Shown in pieces: positions 29,909 through 62,500 of a DNA stretch of 64,000 nucleotides; position 1 is the first letter of the stretch, and each line of letters begins with the position of its first letter. Location of the stretch: positions 50,344,001 through 50,408,000 of the forward strand of contig NC_043013.1 of the NCBI RefSeq assembly GCF_006345805.1, in the 5' to 3' direction. The notes under the pieces are model-generated. The model saw nothing but the letters and a program-made list of their open reading frames with translations. It made no database searches and was not told where the DNA came from. The stretch is from Octopus sinensis (taxonomy: Eukaryota). The translations under genes were made by a program, and so were the position numbers.

Positions 29909-30518
29909 TTAATCCTTTAGCATTTAAACCGGCCAAATTTGGTCAAAATATTCTACTTGCTTTATGTTGAAACTGGCCAGATCTGGCCTCTCCTACCTTC
30001 CATACAACGTCATTTTAAACATAAACAATAACATCATCAAAATCTCAGTTACATGATACTCTTTTACTCTTTTACTTGTTTCAGTCATGTGACTGCGGCC
30101 ATGCTGGAGCACCGCCTTTAGTCGAGCAAATCGACACCAGGACTTATTCTTTGTAAGCCGAGTACTTATTCTGTCGGTCTCTTTTGCCGAACCGCTAAGT
30201 TACGGAGACGTAAACATACCAGCATCGGTTGTCAAGCGACGTTAGGGGGACAATCACAGACACACAAACATACACACACATACATATATACGACGGGATT
30301 CTTTCAGTTTCCGTCTACCAAATCCACTCACAAGGCTTTGGTCGGACCGAGGCTATAGTAGAAGACACCCAAGGTGCCACACAGTGGGACTGAACCTGGA
30401 ACCATGTGAGTGGTAAGCAAGCTACTTACCACACATCTATTCCTATGCCTATGATGATGCATAATTAATTCAAAATAGCGTTACATTTGACAGAATAATC
30501 TGAACACTAGAGGGTTAA
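29909..30518. mobile_element. TTAA-flanked MITE interrupted by a SINE
   Basis: TTAA|TCCTTTAG...CTAGAGGG|TTAA, with a family-C SINE at 30059-30449(-) flanked by atgat-like duplications. Confidence 0.6.
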
Positions 30519-34985: not shown

Positions 34986-36173
34986 GCTACATATTCATAT
35001 ATGTGTATGTATAATTACATGTGTGTGTGCATGTGTATACACACACACCCTCTTAGACACATTTCTGTCAACTTCCATAAGCCAGACAATTTATTCGAAT
35101 TTCTGGGAATTGGCGACAAAATCGTTCAACAAAATCTGTTAAAAATATTCGATCATTGGGGAAGTGTGTGGCGTAGTATGGAGTGGTGATGGTGGCGGCG
35201 GTGGTGGTAGTCATAATGGTTGTGTTAATGAGTGGTGCTTCCAGTGGCTGTGCTACCTTCCGTTGTGGTTTTGGTGGTGGTGCTGGTGGTAGCATTTGTG
35301 TCTTTTTTTTGTGGGGGTGGTTTTGTAAACTGTAATGGTGGCGGTGGCGATGTTTTGGTAATGGTGTGTGTAGTTGTGTTAATTGTCTTTTTATATCAGG
35401 AAGAATTGAATGTATCACGTAGTATTTCTCAACCGTAGAGGCGCAATGGCCCAGTGGTTAGAGCAGCTGACTCGCGGTCGTAGGGTCGCAGTTTCGATTC
35501 CCAGACCGGACGTTGAGCGAAAATACCTAAAGCTCCATGAGGCTCAGGCAGGGAGTGGTAGCGAACCCTGCTGTGCTCTTTCACCACAACTTCCTCTCAC
35601 TCTTTCTTCCTGTATCTGTTGTACCTGTATTTCAAAGGGTCAGCCTTGTCACAGTTTGTTCACGCTGAATCTCTCCGAGAACTATGTTAAGGGTACACGT
35701 GTCTGTGGAGTGCTCAGCCACTTGCACGTTAATTTCACGAGCAGGCTGTTCCGTTGATCACATCAACTGGAACCCTTGTCGTCGTCGTAACCGACGGAGT
35801 GATACGATTTCTCAACCTTCATCTTTTCTATTCAACCATATGGAACCTCCATAGCTGTTCGCTATTTTCGAAAAAACCTATTATGTTTTCATAAGGAAAT
35901 AGGAATTGTCTTAAAAATCAGTTCAAATATTTGGCGTATTATTGAAGTGGAACCAATTTAGTATTCTTTTAATTTTTTACTTGTTTAAGTCATTTGACTA
36001 CGGCCATGCTGGAGCAAATCAACCCCAGGGCTTATTCTTTGTAAGCCTTGTACTTATTCTATCGGTCTCTTTGCCGAACTGCTAAGTTACGGCGACGTAA
36101 ACACACCATCAAGTGATGGTTGGGGAGACAATCACAGACACACACACACACACACACACCACACACACACACA

Positions 36174-36221
<48 letters not shown>

Positions 36222-36689
36222 GACGGGCTTCTTTCAGTTTTCGTCTACCAAATCCACTCACAAGGCCTTGGTCAGTACCAGGCTATAGTAGAAGACAGTG
36301 ACCCAAAGTGTCATGTAATGGGACTGTGGTTGGGAAGTAGGCTTCTTGTCACACAGTCACGCCTATAAATAAACAGGCCACTGTTTTCACTTGCGACTAC
36401 GTAATCTAAAATAATTAACGAAAGCATCATACATGCTACCTTGTCCTATTCTCTAACCGGCGGCGGCAGTGGAGATATTAGAACCAGGGTGTAGAGCAGA
36501 AAGTAAAGTTTGGTGACTGAACTAAAGAACTATGGACGTAATTATTTAAATAGTCAATATTTCGGGGGGTTGGGTGGCGTGGCGGTTGCTAAGGCGGCGA
36601 GCTGGCAGAATCATTAGCACGCCGGGCAAAATGCTCTCGCGGTAGTTCGTCCGTCTTTATGTTTTGGGTTCAAATTCCGCCGAGATCGA

Positions 36690-40179: not shown

Positions 40180-42110
40180 CATGTATATTTGTTTAGTAGG
40201 ATGTATAATTGCTCAGAAGTGCTATGTATGCTTGTTTAGTTTCCTGTGATTGTCTAGCCACATGTACTTTTGATCACAGTATACATGTTTGTTTAGCAGT
40301 ATGTATGATTGCTTAGAAGCAGCATCAACGATTGCTTTGAAGTAGTATATATGTGTGTCATATATATACTACATGTATATTTGTTTAGTAGGATGTATAA
40401 TTGCTCAGAAGTACCATGTATGCTTGTTTAGTTTCCGGTATGATTGTCTAGCCACATGTACTTTTGATCACAGTATACATGTTTGTTTAGCAGTATGTAT
40501 GATTGCTTAGAAGCAGCATCAATGATTGCTTTGAAGTAGTATATATGTGTGTCATATATATACTACATGTATATTTGTTTAGTAGGATGTATAATTGCTC
40601 AGAAGTACCATGTATGCTTGTTTAGTTTCCGGTATGATGTCTAGCCACATGTACTTTTGATCACAGTATACATGTTTGTTTAGCAGTATGTATGATTGCT
40701 TAGAAGCAGCATCAATGATTGCTTTGAAGTAGTTATATGTGTGTCATATAATACTACATGTATATTTGTTTAGTAGGATGTATAATTGCTCAGAAGTACC
40801 ATGTATGCTTGTTTAGTTTCCGGTATGATGTCAGCCACATGTACTTTTGATCACAGTATACTGTTTGTTAGCAGTATGTATGATTGCTTAGAAGCAGCAT
40901 CAATGATTGCTTTGAAGTAGTATATATGTGTGTCAATATATATACTACATGTATATTGCTTAGTAGGATGTATAATTGCTCAGAAGTACCATGTATGCTT
41001 GTTTAGTTTCCTGTGTGATGTCTAGCCACATGTACTTTTGATCACAGTATACATGTTTGTTTAGCAGTATGTATGATTGCTTAGAAGCAGCATCAATGAT
41101 TGCTTTGAAGTAGTATATATGTGTGTCAATATATACTACTGTATATTTGTTAGTAGGATGTATAATTGCTCAGAAGTACCATGTATGCTTGTTTAGTTTC
41201 CGGTATGATTGTCTAGCCACATGTACTTTTGATCACAGTATACATGTTTGTTTAGCAGTATGTATGATTGCTTAGAAGCAGCATCAATGATTGCTTTGAA
41301 GTAGTATATATGTGTGTCATATATATACTACATGTATATTTGTTTAGTAGGATGTATAATTGCTCAGAAGTACCATGTATGCTTGTTTAGTTTCCGGTAT
41401 GATTGTCTAGCCACATGTACTTTTGATCACAGTATACATGTTTGTTTAGCAGTATGTATGATTGCTTAGAAGCAGCATCAATGATTGCTTTGAAGTAGTA
41501 TATATGTGTGTCATATATATACTACATGTATATTTGCTTAGTAGGATGTATAATTGCTCAGAAGTACCATGTATGCTTGTTTAGTTTCCTGTGTGATTGT
41601 CTAGCCACATGTACTTTTGATCACAGTATACATGTTTGTTTAGCAGTATGTATGATTGCTTAGAAGCAGCATCAATGATTGCTTTGAAGTAGTATATATG
41701 TGTGTCATATATATACTACATGTATATTTGTTTAGTAGGATGTATAATTGCTCAGAAGTACCATGTATGCTTGTTTAGTTTCCGGTATGATTGTCTAGCC
41801 ACATGTACTTTTGATCACAGTATACATGTTTGTTTAGCAGTATGTATGATTGCTTAGAAGCAGCATCAATGATTGCTTTGAAGTAGTATATATGTGTGTC
41901 ATATATATACTACATGTATATTTGCTTAGTAGGATGTATAATTGCTCAGAAGTACCATGTATGCTTGTTTAGTTTCCTGTGTGATTGTCTAGCCACATGC
42001 ATTTTTGATCAGCAGTATACATGTTTGCTTAGCAGTATGATTGCTTAGCAGCAGCATCAATGATTGTTTTGAAGTAGCATACATGTGTGTCTTGCTACAT
42101 GTATGTTTTT
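40180..42110. repeat. Satellite array of about 10 x ~194-bp higher-order units, each of ~9 diverged ~21-bp monomers
   Basis: gcagcatcaa recurs every 188-194 bp from about 40320 to 42050. Monomer consensus is roughly catgtatgnttgyttagnag. Unordered monomers flank the array from about 39740 and to about 42180. Confidence 0.95.
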
Positions 42111-45389: not shown

Positions 45390-45447
45390 CAACATTATCC
45401 GGCTTCTGACAGGTGACTTTCTAGTCTAAATTTTAAAGGTAACATAC

Positions 45448-45554
45448 CTGGGGAAAATATTCCATCTCCGTCTTTCCAACCCACGATATGCCTCATCCGT
45501 TCCAGTACAACTGCTTCCATCAAGGTGAAAACAGGAGCCACTTCATATGTAAAC
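45448..45554 (-). CDS. GAD: Glutamate decarboxylase internal exon (107 nt, phase 2-1)
   Basis: Acceptor ttattag|, donor G|gtatgt. Reads (M)[35 protein letters not shown](G). Confidence 0.97.
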
Positions 45555-45735
45555 CTAATAATAACAACAACATCAAAAATAATAACTACAGAAATAATAA
45601 GGATTACAACAGTAACTACAAGAATAATCTGAGACACCTACAAAAGTCCAATCTTCTTGACAAAAGACAGACAGTAAAAATGAATTACTACTGATTAGAA
45701 GTGCATGAAAAATATTGATTATTCGGTAATAATTA

Positions 45736-46030
45736 CAAGGTTTTCTCTTCAAATTTGACGTGATCAACTTCAATCTCGTCAACGTGTCTTCATTCTAAAG
45801 CGACGACATTTAATTTGGTGCTGACGAAATCAAGATAAACGGCAACGTACTCGAGACTAGTGATAATGAATTTGAAGCTGACGATGACGAATTTGAGGTT
45901 GACGGTGACGAAATCGAGATAGACGACAACGTAGTCAGGACTAACAATAATGAATTTGAAGCTGACGATGACGTACATGAAGTTGACGGAGTTGAAGTTG
46001 ATAATGATGAATTTTGAGGAGGGAACCCTG
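45736..46030. mobile_element. TA-flanked MITE with ~50-bp imperfect TIRs and internal 21/84-bp repeats
   Basis: TA|CAAGGTTTTCTCTTCAAA...TTTTGAGGAGGGAACCCTG|TA. Confidence 0.6.
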
Positions 46031-46430
46031 TAAGAAAGTCGTAAAATAAAGTAGTGGGTGCCAGTTCGTGTCGGAGTCTGGCTGTTCGAAAGAAATAATG
46101 TTTACCTTTGCGCAAGAGGTATTCACTACACATTGGAAGTACTGGGGTCGATATAATTGACTATTCTCTTCCGGGCGATATTTTTCGAGAGGGTGGGATG
46201 AGAGGATAAAAAGCGAGCCAAAAACCGCTATTTTTGATAAAATACTTTAGATTATCGTGGCAAAGAAAGAAGAATTATACAAAACAGACACATCTCTTTA
46301 AAAAAGAAGCGGAGATCAAGCATTTCATTGATATATTAGGGATGGTGAGGGTAATAGAGTGGGGGACAAAGTGCCACTAAGTAATTAGTTCGGCGTCCTA
46401 ATGTTTCTGCCAATAATAAAAAATTTGATG

Positions 46431-46472
<42 letters not shown>

Positions 46473-46896
46473 TAATAATAATAATAATAAAATAATAATG
46501 GTTTCAAATTTTGCCACAAGGGAATCCATGCTGGGGGTGGGGATGTGTCGATTATATCGACTCCAGTGTTCAACTGTTTTTTGTTTTATTAATCCCGAGA
46601 GGATGAAAGGCAAAGTCGACCTCGGCGGGATTTGAACTCAAAATGTAGCAAGGGTCGAAATATCACTAAGCATTTCGTCCAGTGCGCTCACGATTCTAAT
46701 AATAATAATGTCAGCTGTTTGTATTTCGTTACTTCACTAGTCTATGCATTTATATATACACACATACATATAAGCATACACGAATACACGCATACATAAT
46801 ATACAGGAGTCACTCGACTAAATGCGGTGCTCCAGCATGGCCGAAATCAAATGCCTGAAACAAGTAAAATAATAAAAGAATATATATATATATATT

Positions 46897-46946
<50 letters not shown>

Positions 46947-47134
46947 TAATATAAACAGCAGTTTACAATGTTTCACCAAAAAGGAGAATTATAATTGGCA
47001 TGTGACTAGTGTTACAAAACACCTACATTGCTAGAAATAAGAGCTAAACCGCTCTAATGTTGTAGTTAACGCACCCGAATGAAAACATATATATTAACAG
47101 CGGCCATAATCGTCCTAAAAGTGCCGATCGAGAA

Positions 47135-47187
47135 TTCTTAATACTGACGTTAGTTTCAGCAATTTCCGTTGCCTCATCAGTTAAGAA
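47135..47187 (-). ncRNA. Minimal type-I hammerhead ribozyme motif (Penelope-type)
   Basis: Minus strand: TTCTTAA-CTGATGA-GGCAA(CGGAAA)TTGCT-GAAA-CTAACGTCAG-TA-TTAAGAA. 7-bp helix I, intact CUGAUGA and GAAA boxes, 5-bp helix II (G10.1-U11.1 wobble), near-palindromic helix III ACTAACGTCAGT, GUA cleavage triplet. Confidence 0.82.
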
Positions 47188-48571
47188 ATAATTTTACTCC
47201 TGGTTCATTTGAGTGCTAGACAGGTCCTTGAATCTGTTTTGGAATAAGTTCTTTTGTGGTTCTTTTGTGTCCATTAATAAACATTTTATTCTGTAATGTT
47301 TGCTGCCAAATTACAGGTCTTTTGGTCAAAGGCTCAATTTAAACTATAACTTAATTGGTATCAAATATCTGTTTAATATTCACAATGATCACTTTGAAAG
47401 TTTGATTAGAATAATGCACATCGATAATGGATGCGTGAGTGCTTGTCCGTCGCTTCAGTTCGTTAATTTGTTTCTTGACGTCTTGTGCAGCTACTGTTTT
47501 CACAATCCACCCACTATTTTTTCATCGTGAAACTTTTGAATTGAATTCATTCTCTTTTTACTCTTTTACTCGTTTCAGTCATTTGACTGTGGCCATGCTG
47601 GAGCACCGCCTTTAGTCGAGCAAATCGACCCCGGGACTTATTCTTTGTAAGCCCAGTACTTATTCTATTAGTCTCTTTGGCCGAAACGCTAGGTTACGGG
47701 GACGTAAACACACCGGCATCGCTTGTCAAGCGATGTTGGGGGGGACAAACACAGACACACAAACATATACACACACATACATACATATATATATATATAC
47801 GTCTGGCTTCTTTCAGTTTCCCTCTACCAAATCCACTTACAAGGCTTTGGTCGGCCCGAGGCTATAGTAGAAGACACTTGCCCAAGGTACCACGCAGTGG
47901 GACTGAACCCGGAACCATGTGGTTAGTGGTTAGTAAGCAAGCTACTTACCACACAGCCACTCCTACGCCATTGTAAATTAATTGAAACATCTTCAGGAAA
48001 TATTCTCATAATGGAAGCTCCCCTTTCTTCCTTTACTTTCGCTCTCAAAGGGCTGGACGAAATCTTTGCTTAAATGTTCAAAAAAAGCCATTCAGATTTT
48101 TCCTGTCTCAAGATGCAAATTTCAAAACTATGTAGAAAAGTAGCGAAAAATTTAAATATATCTTACGTCTGCTTTCGAGGAATTTATTAAACAAAGAAAA
48201 ATAAAATTTAAGAAAGCCTTGATGCATTCACAAAGAAAACAAGTATCTCCTTGTGTCAAATACGAACGGGAACGCCGCATCAAGGAATAAACTCACAACA
48301 GGCAACACAGAAACATTTATTTATACAAGCTACAGACATTTGATTGGTTATTATTTATAAATGATTATATTTGATTAAAGCATTCGTTTTTGCCGAAATT
48401 AATCATATTATGGCTCATTTAACACAAAAGAATATTTAAATCAGATCTCATCATTAATGTAGTAGGATAATCAGACGTCAAAATGTTGTTTATGTGTGAA
48501 ATAGACTTACATTTACTCTGTTAAACGATTGCACACTTTCGGGAGAATTTGAAACGTTAAAACGAGGTATA

Positions 48572-48641
<70 letters not shown>

Positions 48642-48800
48642 ATATATTTGTTGAAATAGAAATATGAATTTTCTTGTTACAGATTATTCAAAAGTTTAAC
48701 CGATACCTGGGTAGCAAAAATCACAGCAGAAAATACACGGTTGGAGATAAGACCATTTGGTGTTGCAACCGTGCGTTGGTGCGGATAATTGAAGTTTAAA

Positions 48801-49007
48801 ATTATTATTGAATGGAAGAAATGGAGTTGAACGAAGATTGTACAGAATTCCTTTTATTACATTCTACACATGTTTCAAAGGCCACAATATGGTACCCTTA
48901 TTTAATCAGAATTTGGAAATTTGTGGACTTTGAAACATGTGTAGAATGTAATAAAAGGAATTCTGTACAATCTTCGTTCAACTCCATTTCTTCCATTCAA
49001 TAATAAT
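48801..49007. repeat. 87-bp inverted repeat with a 33-nt spacer
   Basis: Arms 48801-48887 and 48921-49007 have one mismatch (48881/48927). Confidence 0.95.
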
Positions 49008-49254
49008 AATAATAATAATATATATATATATATTTATAATACAAAATAAGAAAATGGAGAAACACACCTTAATCAATAATCAACTACCAGATAATACCCA
49101 ATCACATAATTTATTAAACCACTACACATGCACATTAAGGTCAAACATAATAGTATAGAACAGCATTTATGTATTAACTTTGTTGGGTGCTTTACTGGCA
49201 GTATATTGGATATATGTTATCCCATGGTGGGTTGCACTCACAACCCCTATCTCA

Positions 49255-49311
<57 letters not shown>

Positions 49312-50338
49312 ATATACTGAGCTAAAGGATTATGAAAGCAGAGGATCAGCAGAATCATTTGCTCACCAGGCAAAATGTTTAGTGGTATTTAGTTCGCCAT
49401 TACATCCTAGGTAGAAATTCCATCGAGGTAGACTTTACCTTTCATCCTTTAGGGATCGATAAAATAAGTACTAGCTAATGAAGTACGTTCTAGTTGAGCA
49501 CTTAGCCTCGGCCCAGAACTTGCTGTCTTTGTGCAAAAAATATAAAACTAATATTTATTCCGGTTAAGGGGGTGAGCTGGCAGAACGGCTAACATGCCGG
49601 AAAAATGCTTAGCGGCATTTCGTCCGTCTCTGTTCTGAGTTCAAACGCTGCCGGGCATCAGTGTTACATTTCATCTCTTCGGGTCGATAAAATAAGTACC
49701 ACTTGAGCCCTGGGGTCGATGTTATCGACTAACCCCTCCCCTCAAAGTTGTTGGCCTTTTGTCAAAATTTGAAACCATTTTCGTTGTTGTTATTGTGTCT
49801 GTTATTGTTGTTGTTGTTGCTGTCGTTGTTTTGTTAAAGTTGCTTTGTGGTGAAGGTTTGTCCCAGCAAGGAAATCGACCAAATTTCCTACTTCATTATC
49901 CATCTCAACAGACAACAGATGGCGAGCAGAAAGACATCCTTTGAAAAGAAATGCATTTTCTATAAAACTTTAGAGCGTTTTATGAGAAATCCTCGTTTCT
50001 TTTCATTTAAATTTATTCAACTTGTTTTAATTATTTCTTTGAAATGAAGTGGTTAATAATACTAAAATAAACCATTCTGAATACAATAGGGAAAGAGAGA
50101 GAGAGAGGGGGTGAAGAAGGAGCGAGGGAGTGAAAGGGAGAAGGGGAGGGAATTGTAAAGACTTGTATATATATATATGAATATATATATATATACACAC
50201 ACCACATACGTAAACTTAACACTCATGAACACGCGTACACATACACCCACACAAAGTAATATAAGTCCTACTCTCACAAACATGCACCCCCCCACACACA
50301 CATGCAAATGCAAGCACATGAGCATGGGGGATGCGATG

Positions 50339-51040
50339 GGACGAGTCGATTACATCGACTCCAGTGTTTCATTGGTATTTAATTTACTGACCCCGAAAGG
50401 ATGAAAGACAAAGTCGGCGGAATTTGAACTCAGAACGTAACGGCAGACGAAATACCTATTTTTTTACTACCCACAAGGGGCTAAACAAAGAGAGGACAGA
50501 CAAAGGGATGAAGTCGATTACATCGACGTCATTGCGTAACTGGTACTTATTTAATCGACCCCGAAACGATGAAAGGCAAAGTCGACCTCGGCGGAATTTG
50601 AACTCAGAACGTAGCGATAGACGAAATACCTATTTCTTTACTACTCACAAGGGGCTAAACACAGAGAGGACAAACAAGGACAGACAAACGGATTAAGTCG
50701 ATTACATCGATCCCAGTGCGTAACTGGTACTTATTTAATCGACCCCGAAAGGATGAAAGACAAAGTCGGCGGAATTTGAACTCAGAACCTAACGACGGCG
50801 AAATACCTATTTTTTTTACTACCCACAAGGGGCTAAACACAGAGAGGACAAACAGGGACAGTCACACGGATTAGGTCGATTACATCGACCCCAGTGCGTA
50901 ACTGGTACTTATTTAATCGACTGCGAAAGGATGAAAGGCAAAGTCAGCCTCAGCGGAATTTGAACTCAGAACGTAACGGCAGACGAAATACCGGCTAAGC
51001 ATTTCGCCCGGCGTGCTAACGATTCTGCCAGCTCGCCGCC
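50339..51040 (-). mobile_element. SINE family A, tandem tetramer
   Basis: Head ggcggcgagctggcagaa..gagttcaaattcc (A/B-box-like) present once, body repeated 4 times. Other copies at 1-245, 12365-12570, 15170-15340, 16380-16533, 23925-24140, 39115-39700, 43905-44113, 46495-46700, 49562-49780, 54390-54604 and 62045-62438. Confidence 0.88.
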
Positions 51041-51104
<64 letters not shown>

Positions 51105-51355
51105 TAATAAAATTCGTATTGTTTTAGGCCGTTTTCAGTGAAATTATGAATAAGGAGAAGGATTGACTTATGAAAAGAATGTAGGGATTGGGACATGGTG
51201 GGGTAGTGAGGGGGGAGAATAGGAGAGAAGGGGAAGGAAAGGATGGAGGGGTGATGAGTAGAGTGTTTGGTTGTAGGGGTCGGGTGGGATAGGGAGATGG
51301 GGCTCTTCACTTTCACCGTCTTCCCTAATCTTACTATATCTTCCTTTCTCTCAGC

Positions 51356-51390
<35 letters not shown>

Positions 51391-52099
51391 TACTATACAC
51401 AAACGTACATCATGCATTCACGTAAACTTAACACTCACGAACACGCACACACACACACATATATACACACACACACGCACACTCACACACACTCACACAT
51501 ACACACACACCTAGTCCTTATGGACTTCACACTCCTGAAATACTCTACGCCCATCTTACACTCATAACTCGCGTACGCACGCACATGCACACACACACAC
51601 ACACACACACACAAACCCATATGAACACACACATACACACACAAACGCACACACGCACACATATACGCAAGCAAACACACGCAAGCAGACACACATGCGC
51701 GCAAGCACACACACACATACGCGAATACACACACACAAACACAAACACAGTACTCCCACACTCTCCACATTACACACACCCATACAAGCCTCTGCTTCAC
51801 CCCACCCCATACGCCTCTCATCCATAGCAAATACACACACACACACAGACTCTCTCCCAACACACACACTCTCTCTCCACACACACACACACACACAAAT
51901 ACAAACACATTGTTTTCAATTGAAGTGAAACCTCTCTCCTTGTCGCTCTGTTCGGGCTCTTTCAAATTCAACGACAGAATTCTTTAAAATCGACCATTCT
52001 CTCTTACTTCTTCCATTTCTTTCCTTTCGTTCTTCACTTTCTCTCTTTGTTTCATTCAAAACCTTACCGATTTACGCCATTACCATTATTGCTATTTTA

Positions 52100-52156
<57 letters not shown>

Positions 52157-52464
52157 TGATATGATTTCATTTGTGTCAAGGAATTTCTTTTTTTTTTGCC
52201 CTTTTTTCTTCTTTTTTCTTTTTACTGATTTCCATAATTTTAGTTTTGGAAACTATTTTAGTTTTTAAAAATCTATTTTCGATTTGGATATTTTCATCGA
52301 TGCAAAGAAAGCGACGAGAAGGAACGCAACTAGCTGACTCGAAAGGATTTTGGCTTATCGTATTAAGAACCAACGGTTCCACGGTTCATTTCCCAGTATT
52401 GGCACCAATCAGGGTACCTTATAAATGTTATTTAATACTTAAAGGGAGTCAGTCCCATCTAGAT

Positions 52465-52683
52465 CAGTGGTTTTCAACCAGGGTTCCGCGGAACCTTAGG
52501 GTTCCGCCAGTACAGTCCAGGGGTTCCACAAGAAGTTACAGAACTGCTAAAATCGGCAGTAATTTTTAATTCTCCTGTGCAGATATGTGTGCATAAGACT
52601 ATTAAATTATTGCTCAGGGGTTCCTCGAGCCAGTGGAATGTTTCCTTGGGGTTCTTCTCCAGGAAAAAGTTTGAAAAGCACTG
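52465..52683. mobile_element. Non-autonomous hAT (Charlie-like) element
   Basis: TIRs CAGTGGTTTTCAA / TTGAAAAGCACTG and a perfect 8-bp TSD ATCTAGAT at 52457-52464 and 52684-52691. Confidence 0.92.
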
Positions 52684-54021
52684 ATCTAGATACATGTGAG
52701 GGTCAGTTTCGTTTATTCAGATTTCTGCACTTACGATTTGCCACGCAGTCTTCTCTTTCAAATTTTTCTACGTGCAAAGAAAATTATGAAATTCTAGGGT
52801 TTTCATCATCATCGTAGTCATCATCATCAACAACTACAACAACACCAAAATCGTCATCATGTTCATTTAACTCATGCTGGCATGGGTTGGACGGATTTGC
52901 AAAATCCAGTGAGTCATAGGTCAATGCCAAGCTTCAGCGACAACTTTGGTATGTTTCTTTTTACGACTGGACCCACCCCTTTATGCCAACCATCTTATAA
53001 TGTGTACCGGGTGCTTTTTTGCCGGGTCATCAACACTAGTGAAGTCACCGAGTAAGTTGCAAGACAGAAAATGAATGGGAAAAAGGTAGATTCCCCCATG
53101 ACTAAGGGCGACGGGGGTTATTTGTAAACGGGGTGGGGTGGCTTTATACCAGGTGCTGAGAGGTTAAAGCATGAGGACATGTGTCTCCTCTTGCCATAGA
53201 GGAGACACATGGCCACCCCACATTATGTGAGGACGAGTAGTAGTAGCTGGGAAGAAGGTAAAGATGGTAGGGATAGGTTCTAGAGCAAACTTTTAAGGTA
53301 CAAGAAGGTGAGCATAAGAGAGGATAAGGTCAGTGGATTGGGAGAAGGGTAAAGAGAATGGGTAGATTCACAAGATTGTGAGAAGGGAATAACAGATGAT
53401 TAAAGAAGAGGTTAGAGAAAGATTTCCCCAATGATATTGCAGTCAGGAGTTCTTGTATAGGAGTTCTTGTCATGTAAGTACCATCATTTGAATAAACAAT
53501 TATTTCTACTCTACTTTATGTCATTGAGTACTTTGCCTTAAACTGTGGTTTCCTCGCTTTTTGTTTTTTCAAACGAGTATTTTATAACAGTAACTGTGAT
53601 AGTTGACCAAAATTGAGAGTATGATAGAAGAAGGCTTGCTCTTCCTTCCGTAGAAGATAAAATTCAAATCGGACCATGTTAACACCAAAAATTAGTTACA
53701 TCAAAAAGGTGCTTTTTTTCTATGAAAATCCTTATTTTTTACGATTTTTTGACAGCTGTGTCGCCATTTTTCGGTGTATTTCAACCAGAAAAATGTTCAC
53801 TTAAAGAGATTAACAAGCTACATAATGCAACAATTTTTACTTTTCAAAAATTCCAGTTCTAAAGGGTCAAAACAAACCCGAGCAACGCCGGCGATACTAC
53901 TAGTTTAAAAATGAAAGGAAAGCGGCGATTGCACAGAATGCAATATAGATTGAAAAAATTTCTTATTACATGTTTGTGTTAACTATAACAATACATTTTG
54001 ATAGAAATGCTTCCTACTCAC

Positions 54022-54112
54022 ATGTTGGTATTAACTGTAGCTGTTAGCCATTCGCCAGCAAGCCCAATTATGTCAAGTCCAGACGACAGTTGGTTTAGGA
54101 AACGTGGGTGCC
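54022..54112 (-). CDS. GAD: Glutamate decarboxylase internal exon (91 nt, phase 1-2)
   Basis: Acceptor tttttaaacag|, donor AT|gtgagt. Reads (G)[29 protein letters not shown](M). [17 protein letters not shown] is GAD-type rather than CSAD-type. Confidence 0.97.
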
Positions 54113-54704
54113 CTGTTTAAAAACGGAAGAAATTCAGAAGACAAATATAAGTCACGAACCCTTTCTTATATTTCAGTTTTCCTTGGAAAAAAAACCCCTC
54201 AAGAAACAACAAAAACAAAATAAACACGAAGAGAAATTTATTTTATTTTGTTTTATATTTCGAGCAATGACTGTGGGGATGATGTGACTTGAATGCCTTT
54301 CTCAAAGGTGTTAGAGATATATGTAAAATATAAAATCAACTTTTAAATCAAAGTCCCAGTGGCCAACTCAGAGTTTTTGTAGACAATAATAGTCTTCCTA
54401 ACATAGGCACAAAGCCTGAAATTTGGTGGGAAAGGGGTCCAGGTCGATTATATCGGCACCAGTACTCAACTGCCTCTTATTTTGACCACAAAAGGATGAC
54501 AGGCAAAGTCGACCTCGGCGGAATTTGAAACCAGAACGTAAAGACGGACGAAATGCTGCTAAGCATTTTGCCCGACATGCTAACGGCTCTGCCAGTTCGC
54601 CGCCTTAATAATAATGATTATACTTGTTTCAAATTTTGGTACAAGGCCAGCAAGTTCGGGAGGAAATGGCTAAATCGATTATATCGACCCAAGTCACTTA
54701 TGAA

Positions 54705-55720
54705 ACTCTCATAAGTGCTACTGGTAACATGAAATCCAGTACAACCTGCTGCATGGTCGGGTTGCCGGCGACTAAACTGGCACCCCCACCAGGCTATCCT
54801 GGTGAGGAGGGTTGCTAGAAACCCAGCAGGTTTAAAAACAAGACCTGTTGAAAGGTCGGATGAACCTAGTGCAGGCTCAATGGATATCTAGCAATAGCAC
54901 GGGTACGCAAAAATTCAGGGATGGTGTCCGGCGTGCTGAAAGACCAATGGGAGTAAGGTACCCTTCATCTTCTGTTGAACCACGTCTCTCGGAGAATGTC
55001 ACTTTGGTATAAAACCAGATATGCAGGGAATGGCATTGGACATTTTGGGGATCTTTGGTTTGTGCTAGAAATCACGGCGCTCCCACATCCCTGAGCCTGC
55101 GACTCATATTGGCACCAAACATCTTGCTCCGGCTTGTCTCTGGATAATGTCAATAAAGTGGAGGAGGTCTATGAGGTGTCGTGCAAGCCTTATTGGACCT
55201 AAAATTCTGCACGAGCATTGCTGACCTCTGCTCTATATGTGCTCCCCACAAATATATATTTTATTTTTAGTATATATGTATCTTTATTTTTAGTATATAT
55301 TTATATATTTTTAGTGTATTTTGGATTTTATTTTTTATTCGGAAGTCCTGCGGCGATGGAAGGTGGTAAAGCATGCAGACTTGATGGGTTGGATACAGGA
55401 GAAGTGCTATGAGCACTATATGGATCTTGTCCAGGTATCTATTGATTTAACAAAGGCCTTTTATACTGTGAATAGGGCTTGCTATGGAAAATACTTGGCA
55501 AACTTGGATGTCCAGAACTTAAGCGTGCTGCTCGAAAGCACTGCTGATGTAGTGAATAGAGAAAGCTTGGTCTGCAATGTTTGCAGTCGTGTATACTTAT
55601 CAAGAGCAGGGCTCATTAGTCACCTATGGAACTGCAAATGCAAAATGTAAGTTACTCCTAGAGCGTACAATGTTTCTCAAGGTCAGCAATGGGCTTCCTC
55701 GGTCACGAGTGATCGGCCAT
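54705..55720 (+). mobile_element. Heavily deleted RTE (BovB-like) LINE
   Basis: QEKCYEHYMDLVQVSIDLTKAFYTVNR (RT domain) and CNVCSRVYLSRAGLISHL (C-terminal C2H2), preceded by a 5' UTR-like block. Confidence 0.8.
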
Positions 55721-55976
55721 CATACATATGTATGTATGTATATATATATATATATAATATATATTGAAGTTCAAGGTTATACAAATCAATAAAACAGAAG
55801 ACAGACACAGGTGAGGGAACAACGAACACAGTGCATTAGTTTGACGCTCAGGAAAAATGTAAGAAGTCTTTGACATTTCGAGCCCACGCTCTTTTACACA
55901 AAGGAACGAGGAGGAAAACATGGATAGAGAAAAAATGGGGAAAAAAACCATGACTGGACTAATGGTGAATACATGT

Positions 55977-58622: not shown

Positions 58623-58891
58623 AGGCGCGTGGCTTAGTGGTTAGGGTGTTGGCATCATGATCGTAAGATTATGGTTTCGATTCCTGGACCGGGCGACGCG
58701 TTTGTGTTCTTGAGCAAAACACTTCATTTCACGTTGCTCCAGTCCACTCAGCTGGCAAAATGAAGTGTAACGCTGCGATAGACTGGCGTCCATCCAGCTG
58801 GGAAACACATACGCCATTGAAACCGAGTCCATGAGCCTGGCTAGGCTTTTAGAGGGTGCATTTATGATTTCTTTTCTTATATTATATATAT

Positions 58892-58927
<36 letters not shown>

Positions 58928-59187
58928 GGGAGAGTTTACGAAAGACAAAAGACGAAGACAAGTGGTGTACAAAACAAACAGATGTATTAGTATAACGCTC
59001 AGGAATAGAAAAAGTCTTTTACTTTTGAGCTACGCTCTTCTACAGAAAGGGACACAGAAAAAACAAGGAGAGAAACGAGAGAAAAAAAATTGTGTAGTGG
59101 CTAACGATCTTCTGTACATATATATATATATGTACAGAAGAATAGATAGGTTGATAAATAGATAGATATATAGATATTTGTGTATAT

Positions 59188-59594: not shown

Positions 59595-62500
59595 CTGTAT
59601 AAAATGGAAAGAAAGAAAGGCAGGAAAAATTAAGATGAATTCATTTATGTTTTAATAACCTTTTGTCTTTTTTACTTGTTTCGGTCATTGAACTACCGCC
59701 TTGCTGGAGCACCGCTTTGAAGAGTTTAGTCCAACAAATTAACAGGAACGCTTATTGTTGGTCTCCTTGCCAAAGCGCTATGTTATGGAGACACAAACAA
59801 ACTAACACCGATATCGAGCAGCGTGTGTGGAGAGACAAACAGCGGCACACATACGCCAAACACACCGCCACCCGACAAATCAGCTGCCCATTCACCCACA
59901 CATAGATAGACAGATAGATAGATACATACGCACATACATACATTGCCTAAATACCAATCTTGAGAAATTAGGCTTCACAAAACCAGAAACGAGAAAGCTG
60001 ATTCAAAGTCTGCAGATTCAATCTATCACTGGAACTGCAAAAATCTTAAAATTTTCCAGAAGTCTATCATTTAAATATATATAATAGGCGCAGGAGTGGC
60101 TGTGTGATAAGTAACATGGTTCCGGGTTCATTCCCACTGCGTGGCACCTTGGGCAAGTGTCTTCTACTATAGCCTCGGGGCGACCAAAGCCTTGTGAGTG
60201 GATTTGGTAGACGGAAACTGAAGGAAGCCCGTAGTATATATGTATATAATATATATGTATGTGTGTGTGTGTGTGTGTGTTTGTGTATCTGTGCTTGTTC
60301 CCCCCAACATCGCTTGACAACCGATGGTGGTGTGTTTACGTCCTCGTCACTTAGCGGTTCGGCAAAAGTGACCGATAGAATAAGTACTAGGCTTACAAAG
60401 AATAATCCCTGGGGTCGATTTGCTCGACTAAAAGGTGGTGCTCCAGCATGGCCACAGTCAAATGACTGAAACAAGTAAAAGACCAAAAGAATAATGAGTA
60501 TGAGAATGTCTAGATATGCAAATATATGCATGAGAATACATACATAATACAAAACACATAAATATGCACATATTCATGCATACATACATGCATGCATACA
60601 TACATACTTACATACACACATACATGCATGCATACACATACATACATACGTACATCCATCCATACATACATACATAAATGTATGCATGTATGCATACACA
60701 TACATACATACATACATACATACATACATACATACATACATACATACTACATACATACATACCCTGTTGATGTTGAAATTCCTATGAAGGAACCTTGGAT
60801 CTAGGTTAGAAACCGGCTTTTCTCTATTGGTAAGATATCTTCAAATAAAACTGAGTAATGACAAACATACATACGTATGTACATACATACATACATGCAT
60901 ACATACATTCATACATACATACATGCATACATACATACATACATACATACATACATACATACATACATACATACATCTGACGGTGTTCTTTCAGTCACAA
61001 GGCATTGGTCGACCTGGAACTGAAGTAGGTGACACGTGCCATATGTGTGTGTGTGGGGGGGGGGTAGGGTTCGATAAAATAAGTACCAGTTGAGCACTGG
61101 GGTCGATGTAATTGCTGGCCTTGTGTCAAAAATTTGGAACCTTTATTTAAATTTTCGAATGCAGCCAGATGGCAGAATTATTAAAGTGTTTGAAAAAAAA
61201 AATGCCTTGTGGTATTTCTTCTGGCTCTTTATATTATGCGAATTCAAATCCCGTCAAGGTCAGTTTTGCTTTCCGTCCATTCATAGTTGATAAAATAAAA
61301 CCGATTCAGTCAAGGACTGGAGGTGATGATATCGACTACTCCCCCCACCTGAAATTTTTGCTTTTGTTCCTAAATTAGAAACCATTATTTATATTTCTAA
61401 TTTAATTCTCTACCGATGAAGACCATAATTACCTTTCTAATTCTAGTAAATATATCCTTATTTTGTGTATCCTTCATAGGAAATTAAGCCGCTGTAACAA
61501 TAAAAGAAGATTTGGTAACAGACTGGATTAGCTGTCATCTGCAAAGTTGTGATGTCATCGTGTCTTGATATTCGATTCGACTTATGAACACCTCTGCAGT
61601 TGCAGTGTCGAAATAAACGTTTGGTGGATTTTTCTGTCACTGACAATAGCGACATAAGACATGCAAGACCAGATGGGCTTTCGATTCGACCCAGATACTG
61701 TTGGTGTTAAATTGTGAGTGAGCCTAATTGGAATAAGCTGCTGGTAAGAAACCAGGATTTATGCCATTCAAGAAAATCTAGCAAATAAAGAACTAAACAG
61801 ATGGCATATTCATTTGTACTTCAGGAATACCCGACGACCGTCTCTCTCTCTGTGTCTTTCTTACCCTTTCTTTCCCGCCTCTCTCTTAACTTATAACACA
61901 TACTAATACACACGTGTACACACAAATACTCGCGATCTTAAACACACACAGAGAATATGTCGGTCACAGACAGAAAAGTATCAGACGTTTTCTTCGGCTG
62001 CCAGATTTATATAACGTCTTGTATAATTTTATAATAATCCTTTCTACTAAAGACACAAGGCCTGAAATTTGTGTGAGAGGGGGGGACTAGTCGTTAACAT
62101 CCCCCCAAGTGCGTAACTGGTACTTAATTTATCGACCCCGAAAGGATGAACGGCAAAGTCGACCTCGGCGGAATTTGAACTCAGAACGTAGAGGCAGATG
62201 AAATACCTATTTCTTTACTACCCACAAGGGGCTAAACACAGAGAGGACAAACAAGGTCAGACAAACGGATTAAGTCGATTACATCGACCCCAGTGCGTAA
62301 CTGGTATTTATTTAATCGACCCCGAAAGGATGAAAAGCAAAGTCGACCTCGGCGGAATTTGAACTCAGAACGTAACGGCAGACGAAATACCGCAAAGCAT
62401 TTCGCCCGGCGTGCTAACGTTTCTGCAAGCTCGTCGCCTTAATAATAAAATCAATCCTTTCTACTCTAGGCACAATGTATAATTTTATAATAATATTCTT

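What the first reader, a model, noticed from the sequence alone, without database searches (positions are those of the whole stretch)
47135..47187. Near-intact hammerhead in the sense orientation of a GAD intron
Seen: 7-bp helix I, full catalytic core and GUA triplet, with predicted cleavage between 47142 and 47141. It lies in the intron between the exons at 54022 and 45554, on the same strand as GAD. Two defects (G10.1-U11.1 and one A-C mismatch in the 12-nt palindrome ACTGACGTCAGT) look like single mutations from a perfect ancestor. Inference: residual cleavage could cut GAD pre-mRNA, or the defects were selected to silence it.
Basis: partly seen in the sequence, partly recalled or inferred. 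Interest (0 to 1): 0.75.

Follow-up and report, generated by a model that had tools for sequence, protein, structure and literature searches.

The report
Decayed hammerhead ribozyme relic in GAD intron
A 53-base sequence with the full hammerhead self-cleaving-RNA signature does sit, sense-oriented, in an intron of an octopus glutamate decarboxylase gene, but it looks like a worn-out leftover of a mobile-element ribozyme, not a working regulator of the gene.

Summary
On the minus strand, 47187..47135 reads helix I (7 bp), CUGAUGA, helix II (5 bp, G10.1·U11.1), GAAA, a 12-nt near-palindromic helix III and GUA. Cleavage would fall between 47142 and 47141. The motif lies in the 8.47-kb GAD intron 54021..45555, in sense orientation.

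It is not chance. No hit of this quality occurred in 1500 random 64-kb windows or with 600 decoy cores on the real window.

Its build is that of the animal type I hammerheads carried by retrozymes and Penelope-like elements, which cleave as dimers: open helix I and a loop-less palindromic helix III.

Several results argue against function:
- It is a single copy in the window.
- No Rfam hammerhead model detects it.
- The active fold is predicted 7.7 kcal/mol (monomer) and 10.9 kcal/mol (dimer) above a competing hairpin.
- The orthologous Argonauta hians intron has no counterpart.

With C11.1 and G15.4 restored, the double-hammerhead dimer becomes essentially the minimum-energy fold. The "two hits from a perfect ancestor" idea is therefore plausible. 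U11.1 is a CpG-to-TpG change.

Cleavage of GAD pre-mRNA, or selection for silencing, is unsupported. I could not show the mobile-element origin directly, because no octopus genome could be searched.

The parts
47135..47187 (-). Complete type I hammerhead-like motif (53 nt)
   Evidence: It is the only descriptor hit in the window. There were 0 comparable hits in 1500 random windows and 0 with 600 decoy cores.
47181..47187 (-). Helix I, 5' strand UUCUUAA. It pairs with 47135-47141.
   Evidence: 7 bp, 6 of them A-U. There is no further pairing beyond it and no evident loop 1.
47174..47180 (-). Core box C3-A9 (CUGAUGA)
47158..47173 (-). Helix II GGCAA/UUGCU with loop CGGAAA. The innermost pair is G10.1(47173)·U11.1(47158).
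   Evidence: U11.1 is followed by G12, so an ancestral C11.1 would have been in a CpG.
47155..47157 (-). Core G12 A13 A14
47143..47154 (-). Helix III, the 12-nt near-palindrome ACUAACGUCAGU. As a monomer it gives 3 bp plus loop AACGUC. As a dimer it gives a 12-bp duplex with two A·C mismatches (47151 x 47146).
47142..47142 (-). A17. The predicted scissile bond is 3' of it, between 47142 and 47141.
   Evidence: using standard hammerhead numbering
47135..47141 (-). Helix I, 3' strand UUAAGAA
45555..54021 (-). GAD intron (8,467 nt) that holds the motif. The motif lies 6.8 kb from the donor and 1.6 kb from the acceptor.
54022..54116 (-). GAD exon ...[31 protein letters not shown](M). Its 5' limit is taken from the tblastn alignment only.
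45446..45554 (-). GAD exon (M)[36 protein letters not shown]. Its 3' limit is approximate.
46943..47555 (-). Stretch X around the motif. It is single-copy in the window, has no direct repeats and shows no unusual folding.
   Evidence: Folding z = +1.71.
47551..47969 (-). tRNA-derived SINE (B-box-like GGTTCCGGGTTCAGTCC) directly 5' of X on the same strand. At least 5 more copies lie in the window.
46813..46942 (+). 65-nt 3' fragment of the same SINE in the opposite orientation, plus its (TA)n tail (46878-46942). It bounds X on the other side.

Best explanation
The 53-nt motif is a decayed, solitary copy of an animal type I hammerhead ribozyme of the dimer-dependent kind. Non-LTR retrozymes and the terminal repeats of Penelope-like retroelements carry this kind.

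In an active element, the RNA is made as a multimer or from tandem copies. The loop-less palindromic helix III of two neighbouring units pairs to build a double hammerhead, and each unit is cut after GUH.

Here only one unit is left (shown). It has a C-to-U change at 11.1 in a CpG, and a G-to-A change at 15.4 that breaks the palindrome twice in a dimer (inferred ancestral states). It is transcribed passively as part of the GAD pre-mRNA, because it lies in sense orientation in an intron (inferred).

It is predicted to fold into an inactive hairpin in which CUGAUG pairs with CGUCAG (computed). It most likely does nothing to GAD expression (inferred).
For: - Complete core, three helices and a GUA site at the stated coordinates.
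- Far beyond chance.
- Type I topology and a palindromic helix III. These are the published hallmarks of metazoan and PLE hammerheads that work as dimers (PMC4209133; PMC7229834).
- Restoring C11.1 and G15.4 makes the double hammerhead the minimum-energy dimer: -35.9 against an MFE of -36.1. The genomic sequence gives -17.9 against -28.8 as a dimer, and -4.4 against -12.1 as a monomer.
- Single copy, not tandem.
- No counterpart in the orthologous Argonauta hians intron L006:5402-8188.
- A second hammerhead-like motif of the PLE "minimal" type lies at 20042..20007 on the same strand, inside a 3-copy repeat family. This suggests that hammerhead-bearing repeats exist in this genome.
- Single minimal hammerheads showed no detectable cleavage in vitro (PMC4209133).
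- Intronic copies of such elements are commonplace.
Against: - I could not show that stretch X is a repeat. It is single-copy in the window. Its ORFs have no relatives in the protein collection, and two metagenome pattern scans found no related hammerhead.
- No reverse-transcriptase or GIY-YIG remnant was found in the window.
- No tandem arrangement, and X does not fold better than shuffled sequence.
- No Rfam hammerhead model scores it.
- Nearest-neighbour energies ignore tertiary contacts in the core, so "inactive" is a prediction, not a measurement.
- A 12-nt palindromic helix III is longer than the 4-8 nt usually described for this class.
Confidence: 0.62

Rival explanations
1. Relic as above, but the two changes were fixed by selection because an active sense-strand ribozyme would have cut GAD pre-mRNA.
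For: Both changes hit positions that matter for the active fold. G15.4-to-A alone costs about 13 kcal/mol in the dimer. In Xenopus, retrozyme copies are under-represented in introns relative to intergenic DNA.
Against: Two transitions, one of them at a CpG, are what neutral decay gives. The motif depends on a partner copy that is absent, so there was little to silence. Even the repaired monomer is predicted to misfold. No population or comparative data are available.
Confidence: 0.1
2. Chance look-alike in AT-rich intronic DNA, with no hammerhead ancestry.
For: X is single-copy in the window and has no detectable relatives. Rfam models do not score it. Helix I is almost all A-U in a 36% GC region. 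A genome of a few Gb would be expected to hold a few such chance hits, at about 7e-5 per 64 kb (extrapolated).
Against: There were 0 hits in 1500 random windows and 0 with 600 decoy cores. The near-perfect 12-nt palindrome sits exactly where dimer-type hammerheads have one, and my descriptor did not require that feature. The two deviations are transitions from a form whose dimer folds as a double hammerhead.
Confidence: 0.13
3. A working, lineage-specific intronic ribozyme that cleaves GAD pre-mRNA at a low rate and so tunes GAD output. This is the reader's first option, analogous to the conserved intronic hammerheads of amniotes.
For: Sense orientation in an intron of a neuronal gene. All invariant core nucleotides are intact, and G·U still pairs at 10.1-11.1. 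As a monomer, helix III has 3 bp, more than in amphibian motifs.
Against: The active fold is predicted 7.7 kcal/mol above a competing hairpin, alone and within 613 nt of context. No loop 1 is evident for tertiary contacts. The motif is absent from the orthologous Argonauta intron. There is no match to the Rfam HH9/HH10 or type I models.
Confidence: 0.05
4. An intronic C/D-box snoRNA-like element: terminal stem, UGAUGA as C box and CUGA as D box.
For: Weak Rfam hits to snoU83B (14.8 bits, E 0.54) and SNORD65 (12.8 bits) on the same 53 nt, in sense orientation in an intron.
Against: The scores are far below the gathering thresholds of 35 and 41 bits. The only CUGA (47159-47156) lies 14 nt from the 3' stem rather than next to it. 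At 53 nt the element is shorter than eukaryotic C/D snoRNAs. The hits are explained by the UGAUGA shared with the hammerhead core.
Confidence: 0.01

Closest known systems
Type I hammerheads of metazoan non-LTR retrozymes and satellite repeats (newt satellite 2, axolotl, mussel, coral; PMC7229834)
   Same: Open helix I. CUGAUGA...GAAA core. Short helix II with a small loop. A weak, palindromic helix III that needs a second copy to form the active double hammerhead. AT-rich context.
   Different: Those occur in tandem units of about 150-400 nt and in thousands of copies. Here there is one copy, with no tandem unit, a G·U at 10.1-11.1, a longer (12-nt) palindrome and no recognisable loop 1/loop 2 contact motif.
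Minimal hammerheads in the terminal repeats of Penelope-like elements (PMC4209133)
   Same: Dimer logic. Palindromic positions 15.2-16.2. Mostly found as scattered single motifs from truncated elements. Single motifs are inactive in vitro.
   Different: PLE minimal motifs have an extra nucleotide between 9 and 10.1, a long helix II, a 4-5 bp helix I and almost no helix III. The 47-kb motif has none of these. The second motif, at 20042..20007, has the extra nucleotide, the 4-bp helix I and the minimal ACGU helix III, but its helix II is short (4 bp). No PLE ORF remnant lies nearby.
[quoted passage not shown]
   Same: Sense orientation within an intron of a protein-coding gene. Type I-like topology.
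   Different: Those are ultraconserved across species and are matched by dedicated Rfam models. This motif has no Rfam match and is absent from the Argonauta orthologous intron.
Schistosoma Sm-alpha SINE-like hammerhead elements (Ferbeyre et al. 1998, cited in PMC4209133; SINE-like nature from my own knowledge)
   Same: A hammerhead associated with short retroposons. Here a tRNA-derived SINE abuts X on the same strand.
   Different: The other SINE copies in the window end at 47551-47556 and do not include X or the hammerhead. The motif is therefore not part of that SINE.

Membership tests
Hammerhead ribozyme (any type) | Invariant core: C3 U4 G5 A6 N7 G8 A9, G12 A13 A14, A15.1-U16.1, H17 | tested here: met
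   All positions are present, and H17 = A.
Hammerhead ribozyme (any type) | Three helices radiating from the core | tested here: met
   Helix I 7 bp, helix II 5 bp, helix III 3 bp contiguous. In a dimer, 10 of the 12 palindrome positions pair.
Hammerhead ribozyme (any type) | Highly conserved G10.1-C11.1 Watson-Crick pair | tested here: not met
   G10.1(47173)·U11.1(47158) wobble. The pair is listed as a conserved feature in PMC4209133.
Hammerhead ribozyme (any type) | Score at or above the gathering threshold of an Rfam hammerhead model (RF00163, RF00008, RF02275-7) | tested here: not met
   No hammerhead hit at gathering. None at E<=10 on 551 nt or on 81 nt.
Hammerhead ribozyme (any type) | Active fold thermodynamically accessible | tested here: not met
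   Monomer -4.4 against MFE -12.1. Dimer -17.9 against -28.8 kcal/mol. The energy model ignores tertiary contacts in the core.
Hammerhead ribozyme (any type) | Site-specific self-cleavage giving 2',3'-cyclic phosphate and 5'-OH ends | not testable with these tools
   Needs in vitro transcription and end mapping.
Metazoan non-LTR retrozyme / satellite type I hammerhead | Type I topology with a weak, palindromic helix III (dimer-dependent) | tested here: met
   Definition from PMC4209133 and PMC7229834.
Metazoan non-LTR retrozyme / satellite type I hammerhead | Tandem repeat units (about 150-400 nt), each with a hammerhead | tested here: not met
   No second copy of the 53-mer or of X in 64 kb.
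Metazoan non-LTR retrozyme / satellite type I hammerhead | Multi-copy family in the genome | not testable with these tools
   No octopus genome could be searched. The indirect routes failed.
Penelope-like element terminal-repeat hammerhead | Location in a pLTR flanking an RT / GIY-YIG ORF | tested here: not met
   No RT or GIY-YIG domain in the ten longest non-repetitive ORFs I picked from across the window; only two of them (52165-52566, 55315-55647) lie within about 10 kb of the motif. A truncated solo copy would also give this result.
Penelope-like element terminal-repeat hammerhead | Unpaired nucleotide between A9 and G10.1, and a minimal helix III | tested here: not met
   Absent at 47 kb. 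Present in the separate motif at 20042..20007.
Conserved intronic hammerhead (HH9/HH10-like regulator) | Conservation in the orthologous intron of other species | tested here: inconclusive
   Absent from the Argonauta hians orthologous intron L006:5402-8188. The Octopus vulgaris locus could not be fetched because the gene range is 103 kb.
C/D-box snoRNA | C box and D box brought together by a terminal stem; Rfam score above threshold | tested here: not met
   14.8 bits against a threshold of 35. The CUGA lies 14 nt from the 3' stem.

The most novel reading that the evidence does not exclude
The motif is a cephalopod-specific intronic ribozyme that still cleaves a fraction of GAD pre-mRNA, alone or helped by chaperones. 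That would couple transcription or splicing kinetics to GABA-synthesis capacity in octopus neurons. The G·U and A·C positions would be tuned attenuators rather than damage.
Probability: 0.04. Interest if true: 0.7.

Novelty: new member of a known kind. Interest (0 to 1): 0.2.

Why it matters
If the best explanation holds, this is one more fossil of the hammerhead-bearing retroelements that litter animal genomes. It is useful mainly as a marker that such elements were once active in octopods. It also shows that a clean-looking ribozyme motif in a gene need not act on that gene.

The finding would matter only under two conditions: the motif proved conserved among Octopus species, and it cleaved in neural RNA. 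It would then be an invertebrate counterpart of the amniote intronic hammerheads, whose function is still open.

Tried and rejected
1. Rfam at gathering, and at E<=10 on 551 nt and on 81 nt, gave no hammerhead family and only weak snoRNA-like noise.
2. I looked for other copies in the window with blastn (word sizes 9 and 7) and blastn-short. There were none for X or for the 53-mer.
3. There is no sequence similarity between X and the 20-kb hammerhead-like repeat.
4. An exact look-up of 7 ORFs from X and its surroundings found none in the collection. A homology search with the 76-aa ORF of X found no candidate.
5. I searched for orthologous loci through GAD.
   - Fragment-length hits gave only a distant cephalopod (Logan contigs L001-L005), alignable in the exon alone.
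   - The Octopus vulgaris model P0024 matches the exons at 100%, but its gene range is 103 kb and no DNA is served.
   - Argonauta hians L006 was obtained and is negative.
6. Two metagenome pattern scans were run. The first gave 0 hits. The second gave 10 hits that share only core plus helix II and lack matching helices I and III; several look like coding sequence.
7. No reverse-transcriptase or GIY-YIG domain turned up in the larger ORFs.
8. A retrozyme-like, highly paired RNA was ruled out, because X folds no better than shuffles (z = +1.71).
9. My early idea that X ends at its own (TA)n target was dropped. The (TA)n at 46878-46942 is better explained as the tail of the truncated plus-strand SINE fragment 46813-46877.
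10. ARAGORN finds no tRNA in the window.

Full report
**What is there.** The minus strand from 47187 to 47135 reads UUCUUAA-CUGAUGA-GGCAA-CGGAAA-UUGCU-GAA-ACUAACGUCAGU-A-UUAAGAA. In hammerhead numbering, the parts are:
- a 7-bp helix I (47187-47181 with 47141-47135);
- the C3-A9 box (47180-47174);
- a 5-bp helix II closed by CGGAAA, whose innermost pair is G10.1(47173)·U11.1(47158);
- G12-A14 (47157-47155);
- a 12-nt helix III segment (47154-47143);
- A17 (47142).

The scissile bond would lie between 47142 and 47141.

The gene context is correct too. The exon ...[30 protein letters not shown] ends at 54022, in front of a GTGAGT donor. The next exon starts at 45554, after an AG acceptor. The exons carry PF00282 and are 100% identical to glutamate decarboxylase 1-like of Octopus vulgaris. 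Further GAD exons lie on the minus strand at 59604-59353, 44851-44732 and about 15600. The whole window is therefore inside the gene, and the motif is in sense orientation in an 8,467-nt intron.

**More than chance.** A simple descriptor requires the core boxes, U16.1, H17 not G, and three helices. It finds this site as the only hit in the window.
- In 1500 random 64-kb windows built with the window's dinucleotide statistics, no hit reached I>=7, II>=5, III>=3.
- The rate at I>=5, II>=4, III>=2 was 0.0033 per window. With a pairing probability of about 0.385 per extra pair, this extrapolates to roughly 7e-5 per window.
- Running 600 decoy core pairs of the same composition over the real window gave no strict hit.
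- The descriptor did not demand the near-palindrome in helix III, so that feature counts as additional evidence.

A genome of a few Gb would still hold a few chance hits. Chance is therefore unlikely but not excluded.

**What kind of hammerhead.** Helix I is open, so the topology is type I. Helix III has no loop: ACUAACGUCAGU is one G-to-A change away from the perfect palindrome ACUGACGUCAGU.

The published description of animal hammerheads fits this build. They are type I motifs whose helix III is weak and palindromic, so that two copies in a multimeric RNA form one extended helix III and an active double hammerhead. They sit in tandem retrozyme or satellite units, or in the terminal repeats of Penelope-like elements. 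Most genomic copies are scattered single motifs from truncated elements (PMC4209133; PMC7229834). A 2026 preprint argues that animal retrozymes derive from PLE terminal repeats, and reports that 43.9% of Xenopus copies are intronic.

**Predicted folding.**
- As a monomer, the hammerhead fold has -4.4 kcal/mol. The minimum-energy fold has -12.1. It extends helix I by pairing CUGAUG of the core with CGUCAG of helix III. The same hairpin forms when the whole 613-nt surrounding stretch is folded.
- As a dimer, the double hammerhead has -17.9 against a minimum of -28.8.
- With C at 11.1 and G at 15.4, the double hammerhead reaches -35.9 against a minimum of -36.1. G15.4 alone accounts for about 13 kcal/mol of the difference.

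U11.1 precedes G12, so it is the usual CpG-to-TpG decay. The results also predict that the present copy is inactive. The energy model does not include tertiary contacts in the core, so this remains a prediction.

**Surroundings.** The stretch 46943-47555 around the motif is single-copy in the window, has no internal repeats and folds no better than shuffled sequence.
- On the same strand it is preceded by a tRNA-derived SINE (47969-47551), which has at least five more copies in the window.
- It is followed by a (TA)n run (46942-46878) and a 65-nt SINE tail in the opposite orientation (46813-46877). The microsatellite is most simply the tail of that truncated SINE.
- No reverse-transcriptase or GIY-YIG remnant was detected in the larger ORFs of the window.

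The mobile-element origin of this particular copy is therefore inferred from its architecture. It has not been shown.

**Comparative evidence.** No octopus genome could be searched with these tools.
- The GAD locus of Argonauta hians was obtained (L006). Its orthologous intron (5402-8188, 2.8 kb) has no blastn similarity to X and no hammerhead motif, even under relaxed settings.
- This argues against an old, conserved function across octopods. It says nothing about conservation within Octopus.

**A second motif.** At 20042..20007, also on the minus strand and in the 29-kb GAD intron, lies CUUU-CUGAUGA-A-GAGC-GUAG-GCUC-GAAAC-GUA-AAAG. Its features are:
- a 4-bp helix I;
- an extra A between A9 and G10.1;
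- G10.1-C11.1;
- a minimal palindromic ACGU helix III.

These are the features listed for PLE minimal hammerheads, except that helix II is short. Rfam gives a weak type III hit (13.8 bits, E 0.99). The motif sits in a repeat family with three copies in the window (19861-20078, 55722-55931, 58878-59085). All are on the minus strand, and each ends in (TA)n. The other two copies have CUGUAGA and GUGUAAA in place of CUGAUGA, so the ancestral core is uncertain. If real, this motif shows that hammerhead-bearing repeats populated this genome.

**Verdict.** The suggestion that the motif cuts GAD pre-mRNA, or was silenced by selection, has no support, and several results speak against it. Those results are the misfolding, the dimer dependence with only one copy present, the absence from Argonauta, and the frequency of such motifs in introns. 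The most likely description is an inactive relic of a known class of mobile-element ribozyme. Interest is low unless conservation among Octopus species or cleavage in vivo is demonstrated.

Noticed in passing
window 20007-20042 (-); repeat copies at 19861-20078, 55722-55931, 58878-59085: A second hammerhead-like motif of the PLE "minimal" type: an extra A after A9, G10.1-C11.1, an ACGU helix III and a 4-bp helix I. It lies in a 3-copy repeat family, all in sense orientation in GAD introns and each ending in (TA)n. The two other copies have mutated cores, so the ancestral state is uncertain.
   Followed up: partly
window 47551-47969 (-); also 17782-18184, 30062-30449, 60114-60497, 17404-17770, 35967-36326: An abundant ~420-nt tRNA-derived SINE (B-box-like GGTTCCGGGTTCAGTCC). 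Its 3' end is normally followed by a (TA)n microsatellite. Its tRNA-like head also matches about ten sites in the Argonauta hians GAD locus.
   Followed up: partly
window 40245-42085: A tandem satellite with a 194-nt period and about 9-10 units, some 98-100% identical, inside the 29-kb GAD intron. My descriptor found no hammerhead core in it.
   Followed up: no
window 47143-47154: The inferred ancestral palindrome ACTGACGTCAGT contains the full cAMP-response-element octamer TGACGTCA. The present sequence keeps only the CGTCA half-site. This is probably incidental to the helix III palindrome.
   Followed up: no
window 16534-16633: A run of 100 N, an assembly gap, lies within the GAD intron.
   Followed up: no
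window 10616-12281 (+) and 55315-55647 (+): ORF fragments that look like non-LTR retrotransposon reverse-transcriptase and C-terminal regions by eye (for example DLTKAFYTVNR). None has a Pfam hit at E<=0.01.
   Followed up: partly
L009:3841-3866, L010, L011, L013 (metagenome contigs): A small family of metagenome sequences shares GTTTTGACTGATGAGGCAACGTCTTGCTGAAACCGTTCT, which also has G·U at the 10.1-11.1 equivalent. They lack convincing helices I and III and may be coding sequence.
   Followed up: no
window ~15600 (-): The GAD exon here reads SHFSMLRAA, where the O. vulgaris and Argonauta proteins have SHFSILRAA. In addition, the first 41 residues of the O. vulgaris model P0024 match nowhere in the window. 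The window therefore probably comes from a close relative of O. vulgaris rather than from that assembly.
   Followed up: partly
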